Shown here: positions 21,588-53,639 of the stretch, piece by piece
How positions within the stretch are numbered: position 1 is the first letter of the stretch
How the letters are laid out: the number at the start of each line of letters is the position of its first letter
From: Vitrella brassicaformis CCMP3155
Taxonomy: Eukaryota > Protista > Chromerida
Assembly: GCA_001179505.1 (NCBI GenBank)
Contig: CDMY01000420.1
Coordinates: 1 to 64,000, forward strand
Length of the DNA: 64,000 nucleotides
Reading direction: 5' to 3'
The notes under the pieces: model-generated
The model's input: only the letters and a program-made list of their open reading frames with translations
What the model was told of the DNA's origin: nothing
The model's database searches: none
Program-made: the position numbers and the translations under genes

Positions 21588-24143
21588 GTGGCAAGTTCCG
21601 GCTCTCAGAGCCTCGAGGTCTCCCGTGACTCGCGTCGGCATCTATTTGGGATGCCTCCCCCCCGAGCGGCGGCCACCCGCGCCCGCCGGGCATCGCAGCC
21701 CATCCTTGTCCAGCGCCGGACCTCACACGCGCAGGACGACAGAGCCAATGCCCGAGCAACGTCGATGTCTGCCTGGTGCTGCTCACTGTTGAGGATACGG
21801 TGGCCTCCGTTTGCCCAAGATGCCAACAGGACGCCCAGTGAACAGAGCAGGATCAAGGTGGGCCAACATGCCACTTGATGATGAGCGCTCATCATCAAGT
21901 GTTGGTTTCGTGTCTTGTGTCGTGTGTTGTGGTCAGCGGGGAGCTCAGCATGAGGTGTTCCTGCAGAGGTCGTTTGTGATCGTGTGGACCTTTGCGCTTT
22001 TCTTCCTAGTCATGTTCGTCGCCGCGCATGTCTTCCTGCGTACGAAAGACTCACACACAAACGAGAGACAAACACCCACTCAGATGGCGGGCATGTTTTC
22101 CTCCCTCTCTCTGTTGGTCGGTTGGCTGTGTGATCAGAGAGTTACGTTGGCCCTGCGTTTTTTGAGGTACGTGAGTTGAGAGGCAGCGACTTTCTGAGGA
22201 GATGCCGGTGCCCACGATGGCCGTGTGTGTGTCAGTTTTTCCTCGGCACAAGTATCCTCTCGACCGGCCTCTGGGCCGTCTACAGGCGACGCACAAGAGA
22301 ACTGCAGCTATTCATCGCCTCGTGAGCGAATCGCGCACAAACCACCACCAACACCCACACACCCACACACACACACGTGCCTGAGTGTCCCAACTTGCCT
22401 TGTGCACTCATTCACCCTCCCCTCCCATGCAGTGGTTTCTTTAACGTGCTGCTGCTGACCCTGTGGGTGACGCGCGTGTCCCTCCCGTACGTCGTCGGTC
22501 ACCACTTCATCCCCACCGGCGACACGCCCACCTTCACAGCAGAGGGCGACGGGGGCAACTCCACGCACAGCCTGCCGGAGGAACCATCACACACTGCTGA
22601 ATGGTAGGTCACTCTCAAACAGACAGGGAGGGAGGGAGGGAGGGAGAGGGTGGGTGCATACGTGTCGTTCGTGTGTGTGTGTGTATGTCAGGTATAAGGT
22701 GCTGACGTTTGGTGTGGTCGCGAGCATCCTCTCGTCAGCCGCGCAGCTGCTCCTCATCCCTATCGCCTACTATCTCATGTATGGCACACAGGCCAAAGCT
22801 TTGATACAAAGTCGTGCACACGAGGGGCTGTTGTTCATCAGGCGGCGTGCTGTGTCGTGTCCTTATCCGCCGGATCTCGTCCTGTCGGCCGTCGACACCT
22901 CTCTCACAACTACACTAAATGTACGCGGAGCTGAAGGGCATAGGTGTGTGGAAGCCACCCCACTCCTGTGTGTGTGTGCGTGGTGTTGTGTGTTGTCTGT
23001 CTCGTGTAAAGGTCTCCCGTGACCCCCTGGACGAGTGGGAGGCGGGAGCCTTGTCGTCAGAAAACCCATTGCCGCCCAGAGATGTACGCGCAGCCACCGA
23101 CCCAACCACCCACACATGTACCCCTCATCACACTGTCTGTCTGTCTGTGTATTGATCGCATCAGGCCAGTCGTTGGTCGATTAGCGTCAGTGTGGCCAAC
23201 ACGGCGGTATCTCGGGAATGCGAAGACTTCATCGCTACGTACGAGAAATCCATTGACCAGGTAAGGTGTGCGGTGCATCTCGCCGTCCAGCACAGCACAG
23301 CACACACAAAGCACTGGCTGACGGTCGCGTCCATTTCCTCCCTCTCTGTTCTTTTTCTCCGTGCAGATCGTTGCGTCAGGGCACCTGCCCCGCTGCCAGG
23401 ACCGAGTGGAGGCCGTCACGGCCGCACGCAGCGGCCTGCTCTACCGATGGCAGAAGCCTCAGATCAAACCCTCCCGGGCATACACGCCCCCATCTCCCTC
23501 ACCCACACCACCCCCACCCCCACAACCACAACCACCACAAGTGCCCGCCGACACGCTGGAGGACGGCAAGCAGCCGTCGCCCCCCTCGGCCGCCCCGAGC
23601 GAACGTGATTCTGAGCGCGTGGTGCCGCGCATCCCCAGCATCCCCAGCGGGGGGATCACGAGCTTCGCCAGCATGTCCACCTTGTCGTGTCTGTCGGAAC
23701 ACGGCACCACCACGCACAAGGCGGCGTGTCAGGAGCCAGGCGGCTACCCCATCGCACGAGATGCCGTCCGCGACAAGACGGCCGGCAGTGTGGCCGACAA
23801 GTGCCCACACCCCCACCCCCAGGCACAGCCGCATCCACAGACGCCGTCTCCCCCCAGCGCACTCTCATCAGCCGTTCGAGCCACCATCTCGACCCCACGC
23901 ATGGCGACGGGGTGCGCGGCTGCCCGGCACACCCACACCAAGTCCCTGACGGACCTGCGGCTGCCGGTGGTGGAGCGGCACCACTCGCTCTCGTCCAGTG
24001 CGCCATGCACCTCCCTCCTGGGGTCGGCCGACGACACGCCTCCGCCGCTGCTGTTCGCGACGCCGCAGAAGGGCGTGGGTGCGGCGAGTGACGCCGGCAA
24101 TCGGGGACGCGGCAGCACCGCCACACAGCAGGTGGGAGGCTAG
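21588..24143 (+). CDS. Hypothetical four-TM membrane protein with long Pro/Ser-rich C-terminal tail
   Basis: Spliced exons give hydrophobic segments SFVIVWTFALFFLVMFVAAHVFL, FFLGTSILSTGLWAVY, LFIASGFFNVLLLTLWV and VLTFGVVASILSSAAQLLLIPIAYYLM. The last exon (23367-24143) is low complexity and ends at TAG just before the gap. Confidence 0.7.
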
Positions 24144-24155
24144 ATAGTGTGGTGT

Positions 24156-24455
24156 NNNNNNNNNNNNNNNNNNNNNNNNNNNNNNNNNNNNNNNNNNNNN
24201 NNNNNNNNNNNNNNNNNNNNNNNNNNNNNNNNNNNNNNNNNNNNNNNNNNNNNNNNNNNNNNNNNNNNNNNNNNNNNNNNNNNNNNNNNNNNNNNNNNNN
24301 NNNNNNNNNNNNNNNNNNNNNNNNNNNNNNNNNNNNNNNNNNNNNNNNNNNNNNNNNNNNNNNNNNNNNNNNNNNNNNNNNNNNNNNNNNNNNNNNNNNN
24401 NNNNNNNNNNNNNNNNNNNNNNNNNNNNNNNNNNNNNNNNNNNNNNNNNNNNNNN
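24156..24455. other. Assembly gap (300 N), followed by a G homopolymer at 24456-24491
   Basis: Direct observation. Confidence 0.99.
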
Positions 24456-24492
<37 letters not shown>

Positions 24493-24680
24493 AGAGGGGT
24501 TAGAGGGGTATGTCGGTGGGTTTCCGACAGAGGCGCCGTCCACCCGTCCCGTCCGTCCGTCCGTATGGGTGCATAGGCCTTACCTACCTACCTACCTTGT
24601 ACTACGCACTTGCGTATGCAATGCATGGCATGGCATGGCATGGTTGGGGGGACTGGGGGAGAGGTAAGGCGACCTGACCT

Positions 24681-24730
24681 GACGGGACGTGACGGGACGT
24701 GACGGGACGTGACGGGACCTGACGGGACGT
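24681..24730 (+). repeat. Decamer minisatellite (GACGGGACGT) x5, one copy GACGGGACCT
   Basis: Five tandem 10-nt units, flanked by GACCT/GACGT pentamers. Confidence 0.9.
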
Positions 24731-27156
24731 AACGTGACGTGACGTGTGAGAGTGCATACACACACGTCTATCTATCTGTGTATATATATTATATACCGAG
24801 GGAGGGGAGTGGTCGACGGACGGACGGACCGACCGGGTGAGTGAGTGAACACATTTTATCTGTCTATATTGATGGATGGTTGGACTGACCGACGGACGAG
24901 TGATTGCCCTGTTGTTTTTCCGCACCATGTGTATGTATGGATGTGTGGTATCGTCGAGCACGGTGATCTATCGGAGAAGGGAGGGGAGGGGAGGACCTTT
25001 CAATCAATGACGGCCTGACCGACCGTATATATTGTGTACACAGCCAGGGAGGGAGGGGCGGAGGCGGTGTTGCTGCTGCTGCTGCTGCGTCTGCTGTCAC
25101 ACACACACCCACACCGGCGCCCATCCATCCATCCATCCATCCATGTGGTGCCTGTGGCCGCTTTCATGCTGTATGTGTGATGGATGTCACTCACCTGCTA
25201 CATACATACCGGCCAACTACACTACACTCTTCACTCTTCACTCTGCCATGTCTGTCATCCTTCGGGACGCACTCACTCTCACTCACTCTCACTCATACTT
25301 GCTAGAGAAATGCATACCTGCTCGCACAATCACCTACCTACTCGCAAGCTAACTGGGGGGTCTGGCTGTCTTCCTGCCTGTCTGTCTGTCTGTCTGTGTG
25401 CATGTGGATGAATGGCGGGATGGGATGCATTGCATTCATGTCACACACCCACTTGCTGCCAGTCGGTCTGCCGCGCACTCACTCACTGACAGGGAGGAGG
25501 AGCCCTACCGGTCTCCCCCCACCCCCCACCCGTCACTCGTCAGCCAGTCCGTCTGTCTGTCCGTCTGTCCGTGTGCGACCGTGCAAATCGCACTCCGACT
25601 ATCGCAATGCTCGTATGCCGTCCTGTCTTGTGTGTGTCGTCTTTCTGTCGCCCGTCGGTTGTGGTGGCGTCTCTCGTTGTGGTGCGTCGTCTTTGTTTAT
25701 GGAAGTGAGGGTGGTCAAGGAGAGAAAGGGGGGGGCTTGCAGATGGTTTTCTAGTTTGCCAGCCAAGTGTGTGTCTGTCGATGAAGTCGATCGGTCGATC
25801 TTACGCGCGGGGAGAGAGAGATATATATAGAGAGAAGAAAGGCTGATGTTGTCTCGTTGTCGTTACTCTTGGCCTGTGGTCGGGTACTGATGGTCGCAGG
25901 ACCACGACGGTCGCCTGACTACGAGGCCGATGGTCGTGTCGTGGTTGTGGCTGCTCTACCTGGCTAGATGGATGGATGGATGGATGGAGATCTCGATGGC
26001 CAATGGCCAAGTCTGCCTGCGTGCCTGCCTGCATGCCTGTCTGCCACTCATGGATAGCATGTGCTGTTATGTAATTGACGGCTGTAGCGTGGCTGTGTGT
26101 GTGTGTGTGTGTGTGTACCTTACGTACCACATTTGTGATCTCTCTCTCTCTCCCCCTTGTGTCTGAGGTCAGTATCTGTGCAACGAATCTGGGGCTGCTG
26201 GGTGTGGGTTGTGATGTGGCGTGATGTGCTGGATGGCCTTGCTGTGTGTCGATAATGCTGCGCATGACAATGACGCTCACTTTCTGGGGTGATTTTTACG
26301 GATATATACATACATACACACGATGAATGGACTCTCTCTACTCTGCGCCCTCATCCCCCGGCCCCGCCCCGCCTCCTTTTCTCCCGTGTGTGTGTGTCGA
26401 GAAATTTTGCCGTTCGTTGCATTCTTTCGCGGATCGATCGTTGTCCTGTCTGCCTGCTGATTTTGTGACGAGACGAGACGAGAGGGAGGGATTTTGCACT
26501 CACCAGCTGCCATGCCATGCCATGCCATGCCATGCCAGCATGGCATGCAAGTGCGGCGTCCATGTGTGTGTGTGTGTGTGTGTGTGTCTTGTGGTTGCGA
26601 GGGCTGCCTCCGGGCACGCGAGAGAGAGGCGGCGGACACTCACGTAATGATGTCAGAAGGGGAGAGTGTTGCCTTAGTCCACCTGTCTGTTTACTTGCTT
26701 TACCTACCTGCCTGCCTGCCTGCTATAGGTCCCTAAGATTTTTCTCTTTGCACACCTGCAATCGGTCTGTCTGTCTGTCTGGCTGTCTCTATGTCTGTCT
26801 GTCTGTCTGTCTGGATGGATGGATGCGTGGATTTTTCCTTTTTGGCCCGGCGGACTTGACTGACTTGGATTGTAGGATTTTTTCCTGGCTCGTCATGCTC
26901 TCACCTGGCTCGTCCCACTCTATCCTGGTTTTTCGCCCATTGGATGGCACGCCATGGCGTGATCATTACATCAGGGAGTTTTTAAAAGAAGGGATAATGA
27001 TCGGGCCATCCATCTGTATACCCCGTGCAAGTGCCTTTTAAGTGTCGATGGGGTGGATGGATGTTGGCAATGGGGGTGCCTGCCTGCCATGCGCCTCGAT
27101 CGACACGTCCAGATTGGATGGATGGATGGATGGATTGGCTTATCCATGGTGTGTGT

Positions 27157-27263
27157 TCTGGTTTCGCTGCTTCTTCAGTCTCCTTGCTACGCGTTGCTGG
27201 CATCCAGACATCCTCTGGATGCCGCGAGCCGTGGCGGGGAGGAGGAAGAAGCAGAGAACCAGA
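27157..27263 (+). ncRNA. Candidate structured RNA or foldback element, copy 1 (long hairpin)
   Basis: Inner stem GGCATCCAGA (27199-27208) / TCTGGATGCC (27214-27223). Outer stems CTGCTTCTTC (27167-27176) / GAAGAAGCAG (27245-27254) and TCTGGTT / AACCAGA. Homologous to 38557-38649. Transcription not shown. Confidence 0.4.
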
Positions 27264-28722
27264 TGCATCACCAAATCTGTGCGTCTGGCGCAGAGACGGA
27301 CCTTCGGAGGGTTTTGAGAGCTTTCTGTTCGGCGTGATGACCCAGGTCTGCCTAGCTCAACTCTTGCATACCATCCCAGTATCCCTGCTGCCCACGACTG
27401 ACCTGACCTCTAGCCGCGTCTGTTGTCTCCGGTGTTGGCTTGGGTTTTTTCCTCTCTCTCTCTCTCTGCATTGCCTGCCTGCCTGCCTACCTGCCTACTT
27501 GATGCGTCGGATGCGTTGGTTGGGTGTGACTGGGTGGGCGGACCATGGCTGGCCGTGCAGATCAATCAATGGCATTCAAGTAGTCATCCATGTACAAGCA
27601 CACACGCAATGATTGCAATCAGTGTCGCGGCAAGGCAAGGCAAGAGAGAGAGACAGGCATCGCATCGATCGCATCAGACACACACACGCACACGGACACA
27701 CACACAGCTGATCATGGTCAGACCATCCATACACACGCCGCGTCACGCCACCGGCACGACAAATGTCAACTCACACCACACCCTCACACCCTCACACCCA
27801 CTCCTCACGCCGAGAGACAGAGCTATCACATTCCTCCTTCCTCCTCACCTCACCCCACCACGTAGTGGCCTGGCCTCGATTCACCTTCCTCGGGAACGGT
27901 GAACGCAAGCGAGCCTGCCTGCCTGCCTGCCTCGAATGAATGAGTAAGTATGCAAGTATTGTATGTATGGATGGCACCACAACACACAATGGTTTACATA
28001 AGTGAGGGCGAGCACTGAAAGACTCCATATACCCGACAGACAGACAGCCACCCAGCCACCGAGAGAAGTGTCGAAAAAGCCAGCGGGAGGAGGGAGGGAG
28101 GGAGGGAGAGAGAGGGGAGGATATCGACAGCATGTCAGCCAGTCAGAATGGGTAGAAACCGATTCAGGGTCACCAGGCGAGAGGGAGAGGGAGAGGAAAA
28201 GTCCGTGTGCAAAAATGAGAGCCAGTGGAGGAGCAAGACACGAGACCAGATAGGTAGGGTCCATTGTCTCCATTCATTCACGTTCGTTCGTATGATGGAT
28301 GTACGCCACTGCTATTATGATACATGTGACACAACTCTGACAGACACGCACAGCCGCCCCGCCCCGCCCGCCTCTCAAGGACGAGACGAGACGGGGCGGG
28401 ACAAGACCTGGCCTGTGTGTGTGCAAAACCGACCTGACCTTCCCCGCTCGCCCTGTCCCGACACAGTCCATGCGGCCCGGCGGGTGGGCAATACGAGGCG
28501 GACCAGGACGACCCGACCAGACGAGACAGACACCATTCAAATAAAGCAGTGTGTATGCAGACGAAGGAAAAAACTGTCAACTCGACCCCCAGCTGCATCC
28601 ATCCCTCTCCTCTCCTCTCTCCCGAAACACCCTCCATCCATCCATCCGCTCGCCGTTGTCGACTCAATCATTCAGTCAAGCCAACCTTATTGAGGTGCGT
28701 GCCGTCACACTGCGATGCGATG

Positions 28723-31700
28723 CTAGCTGTCCCCCTCCCGCATCGCCCCCGCCACCTCCTTCCTCCCACCCACACCAGAAGTACCAGCACCGCTGCCCCA
28801 GGCCGTCGAGTTGGTGTGCGCGTCACCGGCCGGCACGGCATGGACACTGGCGTTTGGGGAGCTTTCGTCAGGAAATGCGCACCACGCAGGCCCTCCTTCG
28901 GCTGCTCCTGCCGTCATGACGACTTGCTCCTGTGTCCATGGCCCCCTCATCCACGACGACTCAGTGCTGCTGCCGCCATCTGCAGCGGGCGCCGCGTCAT
29001 GCCTCGGCGACTCGAACGTCGCCCACCCTGTGACAGCGACGGGCGCAGACGCATTGTCGCTTGGGGGCTCTGCAAAGGGATCGGCGAGTGCCTGGCCGTT
29101 GGTGGCTGCCTGTGGCGGCAGCGATGGCCGTATGGGGGAGGGAGAGGGAGAGGGCATGTAGGGGGCGGCCTGCGGCTGGAGCGGCGGGGAGGACGGCGGC
29201 TGCTCGTGTGCGTTGCCCGCCACCCCCGGGTCGGGGCTGATGGCCGCCTCGCCCTCGCTGGAGGAGCTGTCGTCGTCATCATCGTCATCGTCGTCTTCTT
29301 CCCCCTCGCCCATGTCGTCCTCCTGCGCCCTCTTGCCACCCCCACCGCTGTACGGGTCTCCCAGGCTCATGGGCTGCATCACCGACCGGTCTTTTGGGGG
29401 CGTCGCTGCAGGCAGGCCGGGGCTGTCCGTGTCGGGCTCTCGCAGGATGGTGGCGCTCACGCGGGACCTCTGGTCACCTGCCGCAGCAGCGGCGTCGTGC
29501 GCCGTGTCCTCCTGGAAGCTGGCGAAGGGGTCGGAACCATCGCGGTTCGACGGACCAAGGTCAAAATCCTCATCACTGACCAAGCACATAGAACAAACAC
29601 ATCAGTGCGACACCTTCATATACTTGTGTGGATGTGCCTCAAGGCCTTGACTCACTCTTCGTGCCAGTCGAAGGGCTCTGGGCTCCTTGCCATAGCTGTG
29701 GGTGCGGGTGCGGTGGCCGCGGCGCTGCTGCTCCAGGTGGGCCTCTGGCCGCCCAGCCAGGTCATGTTGTCCTCTCCACTGCTGCCCGGCCGATCCACCC
29801 GCCGCACACCGGCGTGGTCGCCACCGAAATGGGGAACAAACTCTGAGCCAAGAGCAGAAAAACAATGCCCTCCTGGCCTTGGTGGGACCATCGTTCTTTT
29901 TCTTTTGCCGACTGACCATCATCGGTGTCGAATGGGTTAGATTCGCTGTCCATCGGCGCGGATCTACTTGCAGTGCCCTCCACCGGCGACCTTTCAGGCG
30001 AGAAGGAGGCCGTCCAGCCCCCATCCATCACCTCCGCCGGTGGCGCATCCGCCCACGCCGGCTTCGGGGGTGAAGCAGCCGGCTGCTGTGTCGCTCTTGG
30101 CGCGCCCGTGACCTCCTGCGGCGTGTGGGCTGGTGGTCGGCCCGATGATGTCGATGGCGACGTCGCAGCAGCAGCGGCGGGTGCAGGTGCAGGTGGAGGG
30201 AGAAGACCAACGCCTTGGAGAAGACCAACGCCTGGTGGGGGAAGACCAACGGGTGGGGGGCCTAGCGGCTGGGGGCCAGAGGGAGGCGACCCAGGGCCAC
30301 CCTGGAAGCACACACGCAGACACCCATCAGGGTGCTGGTGTGTGGGTGTCTGGTGCAGCCGCCGCACCTGTCTGTGTAGTTCCTCTTGGGTGTTGAGGAT
30401 TTCCTCCACTTCGGGTTCGGCAACGGGCACGGCCTGGGGCACCGACGCCACCCAGCCTTCGTCACGCATCGGGCCGCTCGCCGAGGATGGCGGAGGGGGC
30501 GGTGCAGCGTTGGCCGCGTGGGGCAGGGGACCAGCCAGATGGTTGCCCTGAGTGAGTGGGTGAGATGGAACAGGCCAACATGGATGTATAGGGAGAGACG
30601 TGGCAGCGCGTGTGTGTGCGTATGGTTGCGTACTGGTGCGGTGAGTGTGGCGTAGTCTTTGATGATTTCACCGACGGGCCTCTCGTGCTTGAGTGTCTGC
30701 CAATTCCAGCCCTCCGTCTCGTTGAGCAGCTCCTGGATCTGAGGAATGGACAGACAGATACAAACGATCCCATCACACACACACCCATTCACACAAGTGT
30801 ATGGGTACCGTCTGTCTGTCTGTCTGTCAGTCTTACCCATGGCGTGTGTTGGGCGGCCATGTGTAGGTGATGGCCAATGGTCATGATGTGCGATATGTAG
30901 CCCACCGTGTCGCCCTTCCGCCGCCAGCCCCGCTCGGGACGCGTGTGCCAACGCCTGGTGGATTGGATCAACGGACGGACAATCACACGGATATTAGGTG
31001 TTTGGTTCGTATCAGAGGTTGGCACAGGGTACCTACCTGATGGCCTTGACGGTTTGCGATAGGAAAGCTGAGTCCCTGAGGAGGGACTCGACCAGCTCGG
31101 GGTGCTTGTCGGCCAAACTGATGGCCTCCAACGCAGCCGACCTGACACACCCACAGGCAGGCAGGCAGGCAGGCAGTCACTACTGTGTATCTTCCTCCGT
31201 ATGGGTGTACATGGCTTACTTGACGTCATTGTGCAGCAGGTTGTTCCATTCAAACTCGAAAAAGGCCGAAATGCACAAAGGAAACACACCCTCAGACACA
31301 ACCGCAGCCACCACCTCCTGCAATGCAACAAACCACACACATTCACACCATACACGCCATTGATTGAAACCAACCATTCTCTACGACAGATACCCACCTC
31401 CTTTCTGGTCCGGATGAGCGCGGTCCACAGGCTGACAATCCCCAAAGCAGTGGAGCCCAGCGGCCGCTGCCCTCCCCCAGCCGGCATGGGTATCGCCTTG
31501 CCCCTGGCGGCCAGCAGCTCGCTCTCAAACAGCTCCCGCATCCGGCGTATCTGAGGACACACGGCCTCTGCCACGTAGTCAATGGCCGATGGCTGCGGGG
31601 GGGAGGCACCCTCTGGCTCGGGCGTGGCCGCCGGACGCTCGGGGGGCACCTCTTCTTGCTCTCGTTGTTGTTGTTGCTGCTGCTGCTGCTGGGTGGGGGC

Positions 31701-33864
31701 CTCCTCACTCTCTCTCTGCTGGCCAGTGGCGACAATGGCGTTGGCTGTTTGTCGGAGGGTATCGAGAGTGCCGTTGGCTACCGCAACCTCCTCCTCAGGG
31801 GCCGCCGCCACGACCGGCGGGGAGCCGTCGGTGGCGTCGTCTTGGGACGCCTTGACTACCGGCATCGGCGGGGCCTCCTGCTCTTGCCTCGAGTCGTTTT
31901 CGGCAGCGTGGGTGGCCTCGGGCTCTTCAGTGATGGGCGTGGGGGGAGGGGAGAGGGGAGTCTCGTCCTCGGTGGGCTGGGGGGGCTGGGCGTGGTCGTC
32001 GGTGCTGTCTGGCAGGACGATGCGCACGCTGTCCTCCGGAGTGCCGTGGTGAAGGGCCTCCTCCTCTTCATGCTGATCTTGCTGGTCCTCCTCCTGCTCC
32101 TGCTGCTGCTGCTGATCCTCCCCCTCCTGCCGCTGTAATTGATCATCGCCAGCGGGTCTTTCCCTTGGAGGAGTCTGGATGGCGGCGGTGGTGTGGTGGA
32201 TGAGGTCTGATAAAATCGACACGGCTTGCGACACCAATATCGGGTCCTGAGGCACACGAAGCCGTGCCGTGGAGAAGGTGTGCTGTCTGTCTGTCTGTGT
32301 GAGTGAGTGTGTGGTCTTCATGTGTGTCGGGTCTGTACGTTTTGGAAGAGGCAGTCGACGAGGTGGTGTGTGCATTCGGTGGACGTGAGCTGCTGCATCA
32401 GGGCGGGCGCATAGTACACCGACTCATACTTCTGCAGGAACATCCGGATGATCACCGCGACGTTCTCCGACACCTGAACCCCACCAAACAACACCGCCAC
32501 CACCACCACCACCACCACCCAACACATGAGTCAATCACACACATGACATGATGTGTCCCTCCCTGTCTGTCTGTCTGTCTGCGTACCTCTCCCACTCTGT
32601 CCTGGGGGTTGTCGTTTTCGGGTATGAGTCTTTGTACGATGCGCATCATGAGCGGGCTGCCGTGCCGGTCGGACGTGTCGAAGACGGCCTGCGGCTGCTC
32701 CTCCACACACAGGTACGTCACGAACAGATCCGTGATCGACCGGCTCCCCAGCTTGGCCAAGAAACCATCCAAGAGATCTTCCTTGCCACGGAGGTAGGAC
32801 ACCAGCTGAATGAATGAACGAGTGAACCAGGGAGGGACGGAGGGACGGAGGGAGGAGGGACACACAAGGCAAACGATTGGTTGGTTGATGGATGGATGGA
32901 TGGACAACATTCGTGTGCTGTGCTGTGCTGTGTGGAGTGGGTGTGTCGGGTCACCTGGCTGGTCTCTGTTGGCTTCTGCGTGTTGATGGAGGTCCGCATG
33001 AACAGCGAAGTGCACACACGCGCAAAGTACCCCGCCAGCACGTGATTCAGCTGCAGCCATCCATTCACCATCACGACACACCACATGTCATGGATCAGCA
33101 GATAGATACTTTGGTGTCTGTGTCTGTCTGTCTGTCTGTCTGTCGCTCACCGCGTTGGGTTGGTAGAGGAAGTCCCACAGAGCGTCCAGCACCGGACGGT
33201 TCTCAGGGTCGAGGAACGCCCTGACGACATCACACAAGCGATCGATCATCGGTAGGCAATGCTACACAGGCCTGTGTGTGTCGGGTGCGCACTGTAGGAT
33301 GCGATCATTCTCCTGGCAGACCACTTCGGTCGCCATGAAGGGGAACCTGACAGACAGACAGACACACAGACAGACGGACAGAGAGAGCAGTACAGTGATG
33401 TGAATGGTGGGTTGGTGGTGTGGATGCGGTTGGCCATCGGTCGCTCACTTGTGTCCCCTGTTCTTATCAGCATCATCGGGCGGCACCACGACAATGTACT
33501 CCACCAGCCTCTCCAGCGAATCACGACGACACAAACTGATGTATGCAGGTCACACCACACAGACGCACAAGGCACAGACAGGCAGACACAAGACAAGACA
33601 CACACCGTCGCGCATTCACTTGGGTGTCCGTCGTGTTTGCTTCTGTCTGTCTGTCTGTCCTCATGTGATTGCTCACAAGTCGACGACTTTGGCGTTGTTG
33701 CTTTTGATCTCCTGGATGAGCTCGTCGAGGTCGAGCAGTTTGTCCAGGGTGCAGTCCGCCGCTTCCACTATCTCGTCCACATTCACGCTCGACGCCTCCG
33801 GGCCGCCAAAGGTGCTCCAGAACAAACCACCCATTTGACCCATGCCACCCTGGTTCGGCTCCAT
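28723..33864 (-). CDS. SIT4-associated (SAPS) protein / PP6 phosphatase regulatory subunit
   Basis: N-terminus GGLFWSTFGG..VDEIVEAADCTLDKLLDLDELIQEIKSNNAKVVD, then RFPFMATEVV, LNHVLAGYFARVCTSL and FFEFEWNNLLHN, all characteristic SAPS-family motifs. Long acidic and Pro-rich C-terminal exons. Confidence 0.9.
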
Positions 33865-34083
33865 CACTCAACCTCACACACACTGATAAGTAGATAGATG
33901 ATGATATAGATGACGTCACTCACACCAGCTCACACGCACCACCAGAGCCTGAAGCTGTCGACGTCACGTGACGGCCGCACGAGCAGCATCACTCTCAAAA
34001 CCATCTCCCTTCTCGCTTCTCGAGCTCGCACTCCTGTGCGAGCTTGGCCTTCCACCGACCGTGTTTTTCCCAGCTTTGACGCG
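33865..34083. promoter_or_regulatory. Candidate bidirectional promoter (SAPS / Gle1) with palindromic elements
   Basis: 219 nt between divergent ATGs. Contains TGACGTCA (33911-33918), CGTCACGTGACG (33962-33973) and the inverted repeat AGCTCGCAC-TCCT-GTGCGAGCT (34023-34044). Confidence 0.6.
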
Positions 34084-37000
34084 ATGGAACGAAACATCGT
34101 CGGTCGCGCTGTCGGTGCTTTAGCATCCTGGTGGAGCGGGTCCAAGACCGTCCCGCCTCGAATCCTCAGCGACAGCAACCAGCCAGACCCTGAGACAAGC
34201 ACTGACGAAGAGCCGCAAACGACCCGCGGTGATGCAGCGAGGGGAAGCCGCTTGGTTCCCCGGCCTCGACAGCAGGAGGGTGACGATGGTGATAATGCTG
34301 GACGGGTGGACTACTACGACCACTGGTCAGTGGAGAGGAGTCGTGTCGTGCATGCAATGCAATGCATTCCATTCATTCACTCACTCGCGGACCGTACCGA
34401 TTGTCTGTCACTCATTGACTCACTGACTGACTGCGATGTCTTGTGTCTGTTCGGTCAGGCACTCGGCACCTCCCACTTCAGCTCGGTACCCTTATTCGAG
34501 TGTGGCTCGAGAGCTGCTTGCGTCCTCCCGCTCCCGCGAGAGGGGATCTCCGACACGTGCACTCCCACGGCCGTCGTCGCCGACGCGCGCCACCGGCAGG
34601 CTGTCCCCTCCCCGCGAGCACGTTCCGGACATGGCCGTATTGCGTCAAGCGTTTGAGGAGCTCCGCGTCACTGCAATGGAGGAGCTCCGCACCGCTGAGA
34701 GCAGGCCACCCGAGCCATCAGCGCAACCGTCATCTGCCGGAGCCAGGAGTGAGGGCGGGTTTCAGAATCCCGTGGATGGTGATGGTCCCTTCCTGAGGAT
34801 TGGCAAGTATCGATCGCCTGTCGGTGAGGAGGGTCGGGATTGGGCGGCTGAGGGCTCCAGCTTTGCCGATGAGGAAGACGAGGACGAGAGCGAGCGCCTG
34901 GACGAGTCCGACCGTGGGCGTGAGCGTGATCGTGAGGAGGGGGAGGGGGTGAGGGTGAGGCGGGCGTTCCGCTCCATTGTCGACTACGACCCTGACGAGA
35001 TCTATCCCGACGAGTCGGCCAGCAACGCCCCACCCACACCCCACTTCGCACTTCACCTCCCCGACGGCCCCCTGGAGCGCAGCGAGTCTTCCGACGTCGC
35101 CAGCGCCGCTGGTAGCGGAGCCGCAGCCGAGCCGACAGACATCACGTCAGACCGCCCACCCCCCGACTACTGCCCCTCTCCCGCCCCCTCATTCGGCGGC
35201 CCCTCAGCCGATTTCTTCCTCCGTGTCTGCGAGGACGTCCTGGAGCCAGCCCGCGACGCCCTCGCGAGAAGCTCCGAGGCCACATCGAACGGGCTGCTCA
35301 CCCCCACAGTGCCGTTTGTCTCGCCATGGGGCGCGGAGGGGACGGAGGCCAGCCAGGACGGCAGGAGGACGACCAGACGCAGAAGGGGCCCGCGGCAGCC
35401 CGGCCCTGGTGCCTTCCAGTTCCCCGCCTACGTGTTGCGCGACAACAGGCTGCCACCCGTCACTGAAGAGCGCGAGAGGGAGGAGCGGGAGCGGGATGGC
35501 GGGGAGGATCCGACGTCGGATGTTCCCGTGGCCGGGTCGACGAGTGACCTGCGTGCGATGGAGTTGCGTCGCGAGATGGGTGTGGGAGTGGGGCCGCCGG
35601 CTGTGGTCCCGGATGGCGATGCCGTGCGTGGGATGGGGTGGCTGCAGGAGAGGCTGAGGGAGATTGAGGTTTTCCAGACACTCACGGCTGAGGCGGGCAA
35701 CCACCAACAGCTCCAAAGGATCGCCGAATGGGAGGTGCGCACCTAGACACACATACATACGCACACCGGTGACACACGCATGGACGTGTACCTGTGTGTG
35801 TGTGTGTGATGAGTTGCAGCGACGTGCGACGGCCCAGTTGGAGGCAAGGGCGAATGCTGACCGCACGGCCGTCCAGGAGGAATTCGAGTAAGACAGACAC
35901 TCAGCGCGGCGAACGGAGGGGCCCACTCGTTGTCGTGTGTACGCGTCTGTGTTCGCAGTGAGTCCATTGGTGTGCTTGAGCGTTTGCGGGAGGAGGATAC
36001 GGAGCAGCAGGAGGAGCAGAGACGCGAAGAGGAACGCCAGAAGGGTCAGCCCAACCAGTCCGCCGGCATCCCTTCTGTGGTGGATGCGATGCGCACGTGC
36101 CTGTGTGTGCTTCTGTCTGTCTGTCAGCTGAGGAGGAGGAGCGTCAGAGGAAAGCCCAAGAGGTGCGCGTCACGACACACAGCCACACAGCCACAGACAT
36201 CAACATGTGCAAATTAAATGAATCTGTTGTGTCATGTGCCTGCCTTTCTCAGGAGGCTGAGCGGCAGCGGCGCGAAGAGGAGGAGGCCGAAAGACAGCGC
36301 AAACTCAAGGTCGGTCGGTCGGCCGGCCGGCCGGCCACATACTCACTCCTTCACTTCACCATATCTACTAATTAGTTCTTTCCCTCCCCTGTCTGTCTGT
36401 CACATTAGGAGGAGGAGGACGCCCGGAGGCGTGCTGAAGAGGAGGCGCGGAAGAAGGCCGAGGAGGAACAACAGCAGAGTCAGCAACAGCAACAGCAACA
36501 GCAAGCTGCAGCAGCAGCGGCAGCAGCTGCAGCCCAGCCCGCCGTACCCACCCCCACCCCCACTCCCCCACCCGCCCCCGGTGCTGCCCCTGCTGCGGCC
36601 GCAGCAGTGCCTCCAGCGGGCCCCCCTGCCTCAGCAGCGGGTGAACCGGCCGACGTGCAAGCCGCCCTGGCGCTTAAGAGCAAGGTGGAGCTCCTCAAAC
36701 AGGAAATGGACAGAATCAGAGCCAGCGGCACAAACCAGGTAGGTAGGTCGGAGGGTGGGGGGTCGCTATCCGCTGAAACGGACCATGATGGATGTTGGCA
36801 TTATGTGTGTGTGTGTGTGTGTGGTGTAGGAGAAGGCGATGCGTCGCGAGACGTGGAAGGTGGTGGCGGACTGTGTCAATCGCACCGCCGGCAACCAACA
36901 GTCCGTCAGACAGGTGAGTAAACCGCACACACAGACAGACAGACAGAGAGACAGACAGACAGACAGGCACACAGACGGACAGACAGACAGACAGACAGCG

Positions 37001-38488
37001 AGCCAGGGACAAATGTGTGGGACCTTGTGTGCATATCTATCAGGTAGCTGAGGGCATCTCAGGGCATGCGGAGCAGGTGCGGCGCAGCGGGGCCGACACC
37101 AAGTTCTTGGACTATGTCTTCCTGCGGGTAACAAAGAGGGAGGGAGGCGCAACGACCTACCTGTGCACACAAACGTCAGTCAGTTGTTCCCATTCGTTCT
37201 TTGCTGACGACTGACTGAATCAGATGGCTGAGGCACTGATCAACGCCTGTGAGGACCAGGTAAGGTACTATCACGGCGCAGAAAGAAAAAAGGGCAATGA
37301 CTCGCCCGGCTCGCCCCATTGTGTGCCTGTGCGTTTGTCATGATCATGACAGATCCGAAGAGCTCCCGACAGCCACTGGCAGTTTGCGTGGGCCATCTAC
37401 GGGTACACAGCACAGCAGCACTCACCGGCCATTCACCCACCCCCTCGCCCCCTCACCCACTCGCTGTGGATGTCTCTGTCTCTTTGTCAGTGTGTTGAGT
37501 CGCTTCCCTGATAAGGAGGAGATCTTCGCGGGCCGCATCTACCAGGAGTGCACATACGCCATACCATTCCTCGTACCAATCGTAAGCCGCCCCCTCCACA
37601 CACACCTCACCACATCACAGAACACCTCACTTCATCCCTATCTCCGGTGTGTGCATCAGAGCGGCAACGTCGAGGCGGGCCGTCGGCGTCGCGGTCAGAA
37701 GGACGGCGAGTCCGACGAGGACTTCTTCGACCGCATGTGTCCCATCCTGCGCGTCTGGCTGGCCTACCTCGTCATCAAAGCTGAGATGTCTCGCAACCCC
37801 AACTCAAACGAGTGGGGGGCGGTCTGGCAGTGGTGGGCGCGGCTCGGCAACCGCCTGGTGGACCGCACGCAGCGGAGCGGCCCCATGCTCATTGTGACGG
37901 CACTCAAGGTCACCGCGTTCTTCTGCATGAAGCGGTTCAAGAGACAGTTCAGACAGGTAGCTACGGATGGATGTCGGTGCCTTGGCCGTTGGGGTGGGGG
38001 GTGGGGGGTGGGTTGTGGGGCCATTGGTTGGCTGAGTGCGTCCGTGTGTGTGAGTGTGTGTGTGTGTTTGGTGTTGGCTGCTGGTGTGGTGTGCAGCTGT
38101 TGTCGTTCATCAACCAGAACCTGTGGGACAAGTTCAAGCGCATGGCACGCGAGTCCGTCCGTTTTCCAAACACACCAACAGACTCAGCCAGCCGCCATCT
38201 TATGCTGCCTGCCTGCCTAACTGCCTGCCTGTGTGTCTGTATGTGTGTCTGTGTGCAGCAACCCTGAGGGCATCGGCATCTACGTCGTGCAGTGCGAGAC
38301 ATTCCTCGAGACAGCGCAGTAAGCCACCAACACACCACACTGGCGTGCCTGACGACCCACACCTCGTACTGTGTGGCTGGGGGCTGGGTTGGTCACTTGG
38401 TGCTTTCAGGCGGAACGGCTTACGTTTCGAGGAGCCAGCCGGCTATCGCATGATAGAGAGACCAGCCGAACTCAACCCTGACGTCTGA
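34084..38488 (+). CDS. GLE1: mRNA export factor / nucleoporin Gle1-like protein
   Basis: Disordered N-terminus and E/R/Q coiled-coil exons (35800-36740). C-terminal domain FAGRIYQECTYAIPF..GESDEDFFDRMCPILRVWLAYL..WGAVWQWWARLGN..LKVTAFFCMKRFKRQFRQLLSFI..EEPAGY matches the Gle1 pattern (CP/TYxVP, ESxxxYxxRM, GWxWLARxLN, YxxQFxKLL). Confidence 0.8.
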
Positions 38489-38556
38489 CTGAGGCGCGGG
38501 CATGCACCCATGGATGGATGGATGGATGGATGGGGGTACCCAGGGTATCCTGATTT

Positions 38557-38649
38557 CGCTGCTTGGGATAGGCGCACGCGATGTATTGTTGGGCATTCAG
38601 ACACCCTCTGGATGCCGCGACCCAGCGCGGGGGTCACACCCAAGCAGCG
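38557..38649 (+). ncRNA. Candidate structured RNA or foldback element, copy 2 (just downstream of the Gle1 stop)
   Basis: Inner stem GGCATTCAGA (38592-38601) / TCTGGATGCC (38607-38616) with one G-U pair. Perfect outer stem CGCTGCTTGGG (38557-38567) / CCCAAGCAGCG (38639-38649). Confidence 0.4.
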
Positions 38650-39040
38650 GCATCGCCACCCGTGATTGCATGATTTGGGCTGTGTATCTACCAGTGAGTG
38701 ACAGCGTACGTACGGTTTTTGTCCGTTCCGGGAACACCCTGTGGCCAATGGGGCCACCTGACTTGACGCATGTATGTAAACCTACCAAGTGAACAGCGTC
38801 CGTCCGAGATCCTTCCTGTACACAGACAGCCACACACACATGCACTGCACGCCAAGCATCTGCCAACACTTACACACACAGCCTGCCTCGCAAAGCCAGT
38901 GAGTGCTGCACTCACTGCACATGAGATCGTCCACCCAGCCCAACGTATACACACACATTCCCCTACAGATCTCATCTCTGTCTGTCTGTCTTGTCTGCAC
39001 CCTACCCACCCCACCCCCCCAGCTCCACCTTCCCCCTCCC

Positions 39041-52548: not shown

Positions 52549-53639
52549 TCGACAAATGGGTCGATGGATGCATGGAGACGCGTACAGTAGACCGTGTGAC
52601 TGACTGACTGGCCCTGCGTGATGTCTGGTTTGCTTCTCATTTTGCCTTGCCATTCTTGACGGCTGGCTGGGTGGGTGGGGCGGGGTGGGGTGGGGTGGGG
52701 TCGGTGGGTGAAGTGATGGATGCATGGAATGACTGAGGAGGAAAGAAGGAAGGCTTTTTGCGTGTGATGTGATTGATGTGGATATGACGATGTTGAGCCA
52801 TTGATTGGCGCCACGTGCGGTGCTTCCACCCCGAGCAAGCGATGGAGGGATGGAATGATGGATGGGTGGATGGATTGCAACAGACAGACAGCTTGCTGCA
52901 TGGGCAGCAAGCTAATGCGTGCTGTGGACGCCATTGATGCATGGTGTCCTCGTCATTCAGGGCTGGTCTTCTTTGTTGTCCATGATGTACCTCCGCTGTT
53001 CGATCAAGTGACATGATCGAAGACGGCAGCGGTACGTCACGGCTTTGGCAAAAAGACCAGCGCTGCACGACAAGAAGAGGACGCTGCTCACTTACTGGGT
53101 TCGTATTGAGAACCACCCGATGTGCTGCGTGTCTGTCGTCTGTTTTCGTGTCTTCCTCCGTCACGCAACCGCTTGATGTCAGCCCACACATTGGGTGGAT
53201 GCGTGTGGGGGTGGGGACGCAGTAAAACAGAAGGCGGGCACCGAGCGAAGGGTGTGCTGGCCACATGGCAGGACGTTGCATGCAGTGAGACAGACAGACC
53301 TCTGCGATACGCACGCAAGGAAGATATTTTTGCATGTTATCGGGCTGCCAATTCGCCATGTGTCGCCAATGCTGATCACATCTTCATAGGAACAGGCGCC
53401 AATCCCTCACTCACTCACTGAATGCCATGCAAAATGGTCTGTGTTCCACCACGCAGCCCGTCTGTCCCTATGGCTGTCTCCATCGGTGTCACACACTCGG
53501 TTACTGGTCAATCGTCATGCGGGATGCCACTGGCTGGCATCGTCGGGCGACAGGGCACTCTTCACCTCCAACACTGAGCGCCAGTCAGGCGACGGATACC
53601 TTAAACGCACACAGACAGACAGACAATCGGTGTCTCCGA

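What the first reader, a model, noticed from the sequence alone, without database searches (positions are those of the whole stretch)
27157..38649. Two homologous ~100-nt hairpins 11.4 kb apart with compensatory changes: candidate new structured-RNA family
Seen: copy 1 (27157-27263) and copy 2 (38557-38649) share TTTCGCTGCTT...ACGCG...TTGYT(G)GGCATYCAGACAYCCTCTGGATGCCGCGASCC...AAGCAG. The outer stems differ in sequence yet each pairs (CTGCTTCTTC/GAAGAAGCAG vs CGCTGCTTGGG/CCCAAGCAGCG). The inner-stem change C>T gives a G-U pair on the + strand but an A-C mismatch on the - strand. The second inner-core change falls in the loop. Both copies follow a (GGAT)n tract. One is intergenic; the other is ~70 nt after the Gle1 stop. 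Inference: structure is conserved over sequence, favouring a functional RNA (pre-miRNA-like precursor, 3'UTR element or small ncRNA) over a simple MITE, where the termini would be the best-conserved part.
Basis: partly seen in the sequence, partly recalled or inferred. Interest (0 to 1): 0.75.

Follow-up and report, generated by a model that had tools for sequence, protein, structure and literature searches.

The report
Three-copy long RNA hairpin family
The alga Vitrella brassicaformis has three diverged copies of a roughly 110-base hairpin whose pairing has been kept on one strand only, which points to a working RNA, probably a microRNA-like precursor, though expression could not be checked.

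Summary
Both hairpins lie where stated (CM hits 27155-27266 and 38547-38659; copy 1's own stem spans 27148-27272). A third copy lies on another scaffold (G000:C859:208560-208671, minus strand).

A covariance-model search of the 72.7 Mb genome found only these three. The genome is Vitrella brassicaformis CCMP3155. No Rfam family matches, no target-site duplications are seen, and homology runs past the hairpin on both sides, so this is not a MITE.

- **Pairing:** 89% of pair cells are paired, against 40-49% when partners are slid. Ten of 43 pairs changed on both sides.
- **Strand bias:** G·U pairs outnumber A·C mismatches 19 to 3 in a strand-neutral arm alignment (p about 0.001). All three copies fold 9-15 kcal/mol better on the same strand.
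- **Conservation:** the 5' basal arm and the apical stem-loop are nearly invariant. The mid-stem is scrambled but still paired.
- **Machinery:** the genome encodes at least two PAZ-Piwi Argonautes and several RNase III domain proteins.

Best reading: an RNA-level-selected hairpin family, most likely a small-RNA (microRNA-like) precursor (about 0.45). Transcription, processing and targets are untested.

The scan has already noted other long hairpin families on other DNA of this genome. I found two more unrelated long hairpins in this window.

The parts
27116..27135 (+). (GGAT)5 tract that opens the homologous unit of copy 1
   Evidence: It aligns with the tract before copy 2 and with a degenerate tract before copy 3.
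27148..27272 (+). Copy 1 hairpin. The core is 27157-27263 (about 45 bp, 5-nt loop ACAUC). A copy-specific basal extension pairs GGUGUGUGUUCUGG with CCAGAUGCAUCACC.
   Evidence: MFE -74.4 on + versus -58.9 on -, z -9.4. Extended fold. CM hit 113 bits.
27291..27340 (+). Downstream block shared with copy 3 (GAGACGGACC..GTTTTGAGAG..TTTCTGTTCGGCGT). It includes a T4 run at 27312-27315.
   Evidence: BLAST of copy 1 against copy 3 extends 77 nt past the hairpin. Alignment.
38512..38531 (+). (GGAT)5 tract that opens the unit of copy 2, directly after the Gle1 coding end
38547..38659 (+). Copy 2 hairpin (about 40 bp, loop ACACC)
   Evidence: MFE -52.3 on + versus -43.7 on -, z -5.8. CM hit 112 bits. 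Inverted repeat I1.
38716..38720 (+). T5 run about 60 nt after copy 2. It aligns roughly with the T runs after copies 1 and 3.
   Evidence: Functional meaning is inferred only.
37480..38488 (+). 3' part of the Gle1 gene (context). It holds the GLE1-domain exon and small terminal exons read by eye. The stop is at 38486-38488, or at 38320-38322 if unspliced.
   Evidence: PF07817, E 7.6e-15. Splice sites read from the sequence. No gene model could be fetched.

Best explanation
This is a three-member paralogous family of long imperfect hairpins that work as RNA read from the + strand of the window (the minus strand of scaffold C859 for copy 3). The core stem is about 43-45 bp with a 5-nt loop, reaching about 55 bp with copy-specific basal extensions. 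The copies arose by duplication of a unit of roughly 270 nt: a (GGAT)n tract, a short spacer, the hairpin, and a tail ending near a T run. Since then the mid-stem has diverged almost to randomness but stayed paired. The 5' basal arm (CUGAUUUCGCUGCUU) and the apical stem-loop (notably the 3' arm UCUGGAUGCCGCGAGCC) have stayed nearly invariant. The most likely mechanism is that the transcript is cut by an RNase III (Dicer-like) enzyme into about 21-24-nt duplexes that load into one of the PAZ-Piwi Argonautes. A 43-45 bp stem has room for two successive duplexes, and the conserved 5' basal and 3' apical segments are the candidate guides. For copy 2 the transcript would be the Gle1 3' UTR or a read-through of it. 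Shown: the hairpins, their homology, retained pairing with compensatory change, the one-strand G.U bias, arm-asymmetric conservation, and the presence of Argonaute and RNase III domains. Inferred: transcription, dicing, loading and any target.
For: Three copies and no more in 72.7 Mb, by pattern, BLAST and covariance model. Pairing: 89% of 129 pair cells are paired versus 40-49% when partners are slid by 1-3 columns, 10 pairs changed on both sides, and only 1 of 500 shuffles reached this. Strand asymmetry: MFE +/- is -74.4/-58.9, -52.3/-43.7 and -61.7/-48.0. G.U pairs number 5, 5 and 6 on + against 0, 1 and 2 on -. An arm alignment that scores only Watson-Crick matches gives G.U 19 to A.C 3, p=0.0009, mostly at copy-specific positions. 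Conservation pattern: 5' basal arm 13/14 invariant against 6/14 for its partner, 3' apical arm 14/16, mid arms 3/21 and 7/19. Each copy extends the stem at its base with different sequence. Machinery: PAZ and Piwi lie on the same strand at C537 and at C309, further Piwi loci exist, and there are at least four RNase III domain loci. No Rfam family matches, only weak generic similarity to miRNA-precursor models. Other long hairpins occur in the same window.
Against: No expression or small-RNA data could be consulted. With three sequences the covariation statistics are weak. No site with extended complementarity to the conserved segments was found elsewhere in the genome. The loop and both apical arms are conserved, whereas in typical miRNA genes the loop is the least conserved part. 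A true Dicer architecture (helicase, PAZ and two RNase III domains) was not verified. Quasi-palindrome correction at the DNA level can also produce compensatory changes.
Confidence: 0.45

Rival explanations
1. The hairpin is a cis-acting RNA structure at gene ends. It would sit in a 3' UTR or just past it and serve as an RNase III cleavage, termination, stability or localisation signal. It would not yield trans-acting small RNAs.
For: Copy 2 lies 62 nt (or 228 nt) after the Gle1 stop on the sense strand, between convergent genes. The published median intergenic distance in Vitrella is 92 bp, so this position is almost certainly transcribed (PMC4501334). The one-strand pairing bias fits any RNA-level role.
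Against: Copy 1 sits in about 5 kb without coding signal, not directly after a recognisable coding end. A purely structural signal would not need 13/14 and 14/16 sequence invariance in two blocks across old paralogues. Other (GGAT)n tracts in the window are not followed by such hairpins.
Confidence: 0.2
2. The hairpin is a neutral low-copy foldback repeat, a relic of a small non-autonomous transposon or a segmental duplicate. Its arms would be kept complementary by DNA-level template switching (quasi-palindrome correction), with no RNA function.
For: It is an inverted repeat present in several dispersed copies. Compensatory changes can arise in one step by intrastrand templated repair (established knowledge, not tested here). 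No expression evidence exists.
Against: Only 3 copies exist. No target-site duplications are visible, and homology extends about 40-90 nt upstream and about 77 nt downstream of the hairpin rather than stopping at the inverted-repeat ends. DNA-level correction would give Watson-Crick pairs on both strands, yet G.U:A.C is 19:3 and all copies favour the same strand. The mid-stem is more diverged (24-38% identity) than the flanks (40-62%) but is still paired.
Confidence: 0.15
3. The unit is an independent, possibly RNA polymerase III-type, structured non-coding RNA of an undescribed class. The roughly 200-nt RNA would run from near the (GGAT)n tract to the downstream T run and act as a whole, for example as a protein scaffold, rather than being diced.
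For: The homologous unit is larger than the hairpin. A run of at least four T lies 50-65 nt after the hairpin in all three copies, in a 58% G+C genome. Copy 1 is far from any recognisable gene.
Against: The T runs are short and partly shared by descent, so they are weak evidence. No promoter element is recognisable. Conservation of the tail is poor in copy 2. A near-perfect stem of 43-55 bp is atypical of known scaffold RNAs and typical of RNase III substrates.
Confidence: 0.1

Closest known systems
MicroRNA / hairpin-RNA precursors of algae, plants and alveolates (for example the long near-perfect hairpin precursors of Chlamydomonas, and the miRNA families reported in Toxoplasma and Symbiodinium; recalled from my own knowledge, not tested here)
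   Same: A single long imperfect hairpin of about 100-125 nt. Pairing is selected on the transcribed strand with many G.U pairs. It forms a small paralogous family, and one arm of a duplex segment is better conserved than its partner. The genome has Argonaute and RNase III.
   Different: No small-RNA reads, no defined mature or star pair, and no target. The loop and apical stem are the most conserved part. No miRNA has been described for chromerids in the papers I could search.
MITEs / foldback transposable elements
   Same: A short palindromic element found at several dispersed places, one of them next to a gene.
   Different: Only three copies and no target-site duplication. Homology continues asymmetrically past the inverted repeat. 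There is a strong one-strand G.U bias, and the mid-arms have diverged with compensation.
Other long hairpin families noted by this scan in the same genome (s1-197163, s1-197211, s1-201690, s1-201674)
   Same: Same organism, same size class (about 100-140 nt), and the same one-strand RNA-type pairing according to those notes. I independently found two further long hairpins in this window (52940-53085 and 53120-53250).
   Different: I could not compare sequences with those families. The two extra hairpins in this window are unrelated in sequence, and 53120-53250 has no paralogue. This family is distinguished by its (GGAT)n leader and its position after Gle1.
Rfam miRNA precursor models MIR6426, mir-6131, mir-253 (weak hits)
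   Same: Generic long-hairpin shape spanning the whole model.
   Different: Scores of 21-25 bits against gathering scores of 66-96. Copy 2 gives no such hit. This is not membership.

Membership tests
microRNA-like / hairpin small-RNA precursor | The transcript folds into a single extended hairpin without large internal loops, able to hold a duplex of about 21 nt with few mismatches | tested here: met
   39-45 paired positions per copy in one unbranched stem. z-scores are -9.4, -5.8 and -5.0.
microRNA-like / hairpin small-RNA precursor | Discrete 20-24-nt reads from one arm, with a star strand offset by 2-nt 3' overhangs | not testable with these tools
microRNA-like / hairpin small-RNA precursor | The organism has Argonaute and a Dicer-type RNase III | tested here: inconclusive
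   PAZ and Piwi lie on one strand at C537 and at C309. RNase III domains occur at four loci. A full Dicer domain architecture was not verified.
microRNA-like / hairpin small-RNA precursor | The mature-strand sequence is conserved among paralogues more than its partner strand and the loop | tested here: inconclusive
   The 5' basal arm is 13/14 invariant against 6/14 for its partner, which fits. However, the loop (4/5) and both apical arms (12/16 and 14/16) are also conserved.
microRNA-like / hairpin small-RNA precursor | A complementary target site exists elsewhere in the genome | tested here: not met
   No extended match outside the family. Fifteen extra matches of 19 nt with up to 2 mismatches do not extend further. 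Seed-only targeting cannot be assessed.
MITE / foldback transposon | Tens to thousands of copies | tested here: not met
   Three copies by pattern, BLAST and covariance model over 72.7 Mb.
MITE / foldback transposon | Target-site duplication, and homology ending at the terminal inverted repeats | tested here: not met
   No duplicated flank is visible by eye. Homology extends upstream through (GGAT)n, and 77 nt downstream between copies 1 and 3.
Any Rfam 15 family | Score at or above the family gathering threshold | tested here: not met
   No matches at gathering threshold in the whole window. Only sub-threshold hairpin look-alikes appear.
Protein-coding exon | A reading frame conserved among copies, with protein-like substitution | tested here: not met
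   Copies 1 and 3 are open in the same frame, but copy 2 carries a +1 indel between the arm and the apex. No Pfam hit. The substitutions are compensatory across the arms instead.

The most novel reading that the evidence does not exclude
Vitrella brassicaformis, a free-living photosynthetic relative of apicomplexan parasites, has a so far undescribed repertoire of microRNA-like hairpin genes. In this family only the 5' part of each candidate guide is conserved among old paralogues, while the rest co-varies with the opposite arm. That would suggest seed-type target recognition in an alveolate, with one member embedded in the 3' UTR of the mRNA-export factor Gle1.
Probability: 0.2. Interest if true: 0.7.

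Novelty: new member of a known kind. Interest (0 to 1): 0.5.

Why it matters
No microRNAs or hairpin small RNAs have been described for chromerids in the literature I could search. Among their apicomplexan relatives the small-RNA pathway is kept in some lineages and lost in others (from my own knowledge). Chromerids are therefore the natural place to ask what the ancestral pathway regulated. A small, well-delimited family with clear RNA-level constraint gives three exact loci and two candidate guide sequences. These can be checked at once against existing strand-specific RNA-seq and against new small-RNA libraries. Taken alone, it is one more candidate of a class that this scan has already met several times in the same genome.

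Tried and rejected
- **More family members.** Searches with the 25-nt core (up to 3 mismatches), the 22-nt core, the 15-nt 5' motif and covariance model R1 found none. The hits at C634:37264, C98:33669 and C402 are chance matches on inspection.
- **Relatives in metagenomes.** Two pattern scans gave nothing real. The single hit, Ga0136611_10024635, lies in sequence that reads like a coding gene and forms no hairpin. No chromerid or other eukaryote genome besides this one can be searched here.
- **Coding exon.** Rejected. The reading frame is not conserved in copy 2, and there is no Pfam hit.
- **General rule that (GGAT)n is followed by a hairpin.** Rejected. None of the 18 other perfect (GGAT)3+ tracts in the window is followed by an exceptional hairpin.
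- **Larger repeat around copy 1.** A BLAST of 24.0-29.1 kb against the genome gave microsatellite hits, copy 3, and one unrelated 75-nt two-copy segment.
- **Gene models around the copies.**
  - Two protein word searches with window exons were blank.
  - The third search found the Vitrella protein P0001 near copy 3.
  - My crude GC3 scan gives only approximate coding strands.
- **Targets.** The 19-nt 3'-arm pattern has 15 extra matches with up to 2 mismatches, against 1 for the reversed control. None extends beyond the pattern. The excess may reflect GC-rich coding composition.
Full report
**Organism**

The window is part of a 72,700,666-base assembly in 1064 pieces. That is exactly the size and scaffold count published for Vitrella brassicaformis CCMP3155 (Woo et al. 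2015, PMC4501334). A protein encoded 5 kb from the third copy is named as a product of that organism, on a 244,045-base contig that matches scaffold C859 in length. The paper reports only 1.5 Mb of transposable elements and a median distance of 92 bp between genes including UTRs.

**Observation**

- The 25-nt apical core occurs twice in the window, against none in 100 shuffles.
- Copy 1 folds at -74.4 kcal/mol (z -9.4) and copy 2 at -52.3 kcal/mol (z -5.8).
- They are the two longest short-loop inverted repeats in the window. The others are microsatellite palindromes.
- The details hold: differing but paired outer stems, a C>U giving U.G in the inner stem, a loop substitution, and a preceding (GGAT)5 tract.
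- Gle1 is confirmed by PF07817.
- Reading the splice sites by eye, Gle1's last exons end either at TGA 38486-38488 or, unspliced, at TAA 38320-38322. The hairpin base at 38550 is therefore 62 or 228 nt past the stop, on the sense strand.

**Family size**

Whole-genome searches used BLAST, degenerate patterns with mismatches, and a covariance model built from the copies (R1: 113 positions, 43 pairs).

- They found one further copy, G000:C859:208560-208671 on the minus strand, and nothing else. Other matches proved to be chance on inspection.
- The third copy also folds as a long hairpin: -61.7 kcal/mol, z -5.0.
- Rfam has no match at gathering threshold. Copy 1 has only weak shape-level resemblance to miRNA precursor models.
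- Two metagenome scans found no relative.

**Extent of homology**

- The repeated unit is larger than the hairpin.
- All three copies align from a (GGAT)n tract (degenerate in copy 3), through a spacer, into the hairpin.
- Copies 1 and 3 also share about 77 nt downstream. Copies 2 and 3 share about 78 nt upstream.
- A run of at least four T lies 50-65 nt after each hairpin.
- No target-site duplication is visible.

This is how duplicated genes look. It is not how a MITE bounded by its inverted repeats looks.

**Structure versus sequence**

- On the three-way alignment, 89% of 129 pair cells are standard pairs, against 40-49% when the 3' partners are slid by 1-3 columns.
- Ten of 43 pairs show changes on both sides, and only 1 of 500 column shuffles reaches the observed values.
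- The 5' basal arm is 13/14 invariant, while its 3' partner is 6/14.
- The 3' apical arm is 14/16 invariant, the 5' apical arm 12/16 and the loop 4/5.
- The mid arms are 3/21 and 7/19 invariant, with pairwise identity as low as 24-38%. That is below the flanks (40-62%), yet the mid arms still pair.
- Each copy also extends the stem at its base with unrelated sequence. For copy 1 this gives 27148-27272.

**Strand asymmetry**

- All three copies fold 9-15 kcal/mol better on the same strand.
- G.U pairs number 5, 5 and 6 on that strand, against 0, 1 and 2 on the other.
- To avoid bias from the folding program, I aligned each 5' arm with the reverse complement of its 3' arm, scoring Watson-Crick matches only. 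Among the mismatched columns there are 19 G.U and 3 A.C (binomial p = 0.0009).
- Most of these lie at copy-specific positions, so they are largely independent events.
- Correction of quasi-palindromes at the DNA level would not give this bias. Known transcription-linked mutation asymmetries are, from my own knowledge, far smaller.
- I take this as the strongest evidence that the pairing matters in an RNA read from the + strand.

**Machinery and class**

- The genome has PAZ and Piwi domains on the same strand about 2-3.5 kb apart at C537 and at C309, so at least two Argonaute genes. Further Piwi loci also exist.
- RNase III domains occur at four loci. I did not verify a complete Dicer.
- A 110-nt folding scan of the window found two more long hairpins, unrelated in sequence and standing in tandem.
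  - 52940-53085 folds at -72.6 kcal/mol (z -7.0) and is symmetric between strands.
  - 53120-53250 folds at -69.7 kcal/mol (z -5.9) on + but only -36.8 kcal/mol (z -0.4) on -. It has no paralogue.
- Earlier notes of this scan describe several other hairpin families of 100-140 nt in the same genome. Those notes are unchecked, but my own scan agrees that such hairpins are not rare here.

**Mechanism**

The best-supported reading is a small family of hairpin RNA genes cut by an RNase III enzyme into small RNAs that load into Argonaute.

- The 43-45 bp stem has room for two successive duplexes of about 21 nt.
- The two best-conserved single-arm segments are the 5' basal arm (CUGAUUUCGCUGCUU) and the 3' apical arm (UCUGGAUGCCGCGAGCC). 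They sit where the 5' parts of a basal 5p and an apical 3p product would lie. This placement is inference.
- Against this reading:
  - No extended complementary site exists elsewhere in the genome.
  - The loop is conserved.
  - Nothing shows transcription.
- I put this reading at about 0.45.
- Rivals:
  - A cis-acting 3'-end or stability structure (0.2).
  - A neutral foldback repeat (0.15).
  - An undescribed structured RNA ending at the T run (0.1).

**Limits**

- With three sequences, covariation tests have little power.
- No other chromerid genome could be searched.
- Gene models and UTRs could not be fetched. The context of copies 1 and 3 therefore rests on the absence of coding signal and of Pfam hits.

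**Verdict**

The family is a new member of a known kind (microRNA-like hairpin loci) in a lineage where none is published. It is one of several such candidates this scan has already met in this genome, so interest is moderate (0.5) until expression data are examined.

Noticed in passing
window 52940-53085 and 53120-53250 (+): Two unrelated long hairpins stand in tandem, about 230 nt after an imperfect (GGAT)n tract (52843-52890) and about 80 nt before a T5 run. The first folds equally on both strands (-72.6/-70.1). The second folds only on + (-69.7, z -5.9, versus -36.8, z -0.4) and has no paralogue in the genome. They look like a two-hairpin cluster.
   Followed up: partly
window 26982-27059 (+) and G000:C356:215330-215404 (-): A 75-nt non-coding segment about 100 nt upstream of copy 1 is 87% identical (near-perfect over about 64 nt) to one other place in the genome. 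That place has no hairpin of this family. The function of this two-copy segment is unknown.
   Followed up: partly
window 24000-29100: About 5 kb without coding signal or Pfam hit, dense in (GTCT)n, (GGAT)n, (GT)n and (CCTG)n tracts. This is unusual in a genome whose published median intergenic distance is 92 bp. It may be a non-coding transcription unit that hosts copy 1.
   Followed up: partly
whole window: Tetranucleotide tracts are very dense. There are about 20 (GGAT)n/(ATCC)n tracts per 64 kb, roughly one per gene, plus many (GTCT)n and (CA)n tracts, often just before intron acceptor sites or ATG. Their role is unknown.
   Followed up: no
G000:C537:21682-24174 (-) and G000:C309:28486-32133 (-): PAZ and Piwi domain matches lie on the same strand at both places, indicating two Argonaute genes. 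Further Piwi-only matches are at C227, C413 and C425. RNase III domains are at C473, C376, C341 and C688.
   Followed up: partly
G000, 15 places (for example C867:12157, C494:48758, C908:166623, C996:2577): The 19-nt 3'-arm motif CCTCTGGATGCCGCGRSCC has 15 extra matches with up to 2 mismatches, against 1 for the reversed control. One variant, CATCTGGTTGCCGCGAGCC, recurs three times. The matches do not extend beyond the motif. This may be coding-composition bias or weak target-like sites.
   Followed up: partly
L039:1197-2960 (+) = G000:C859:201796-203559: A 588-codon open stretch 5 kb from copy 3 encodes most of a 651-aa Vitrella P-loop protein (P0001, PF13671/PF13238). Its best relatives are plant LPA1 / 2-phosphoglycerate-kinase-like proteins.
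   Followed up: no
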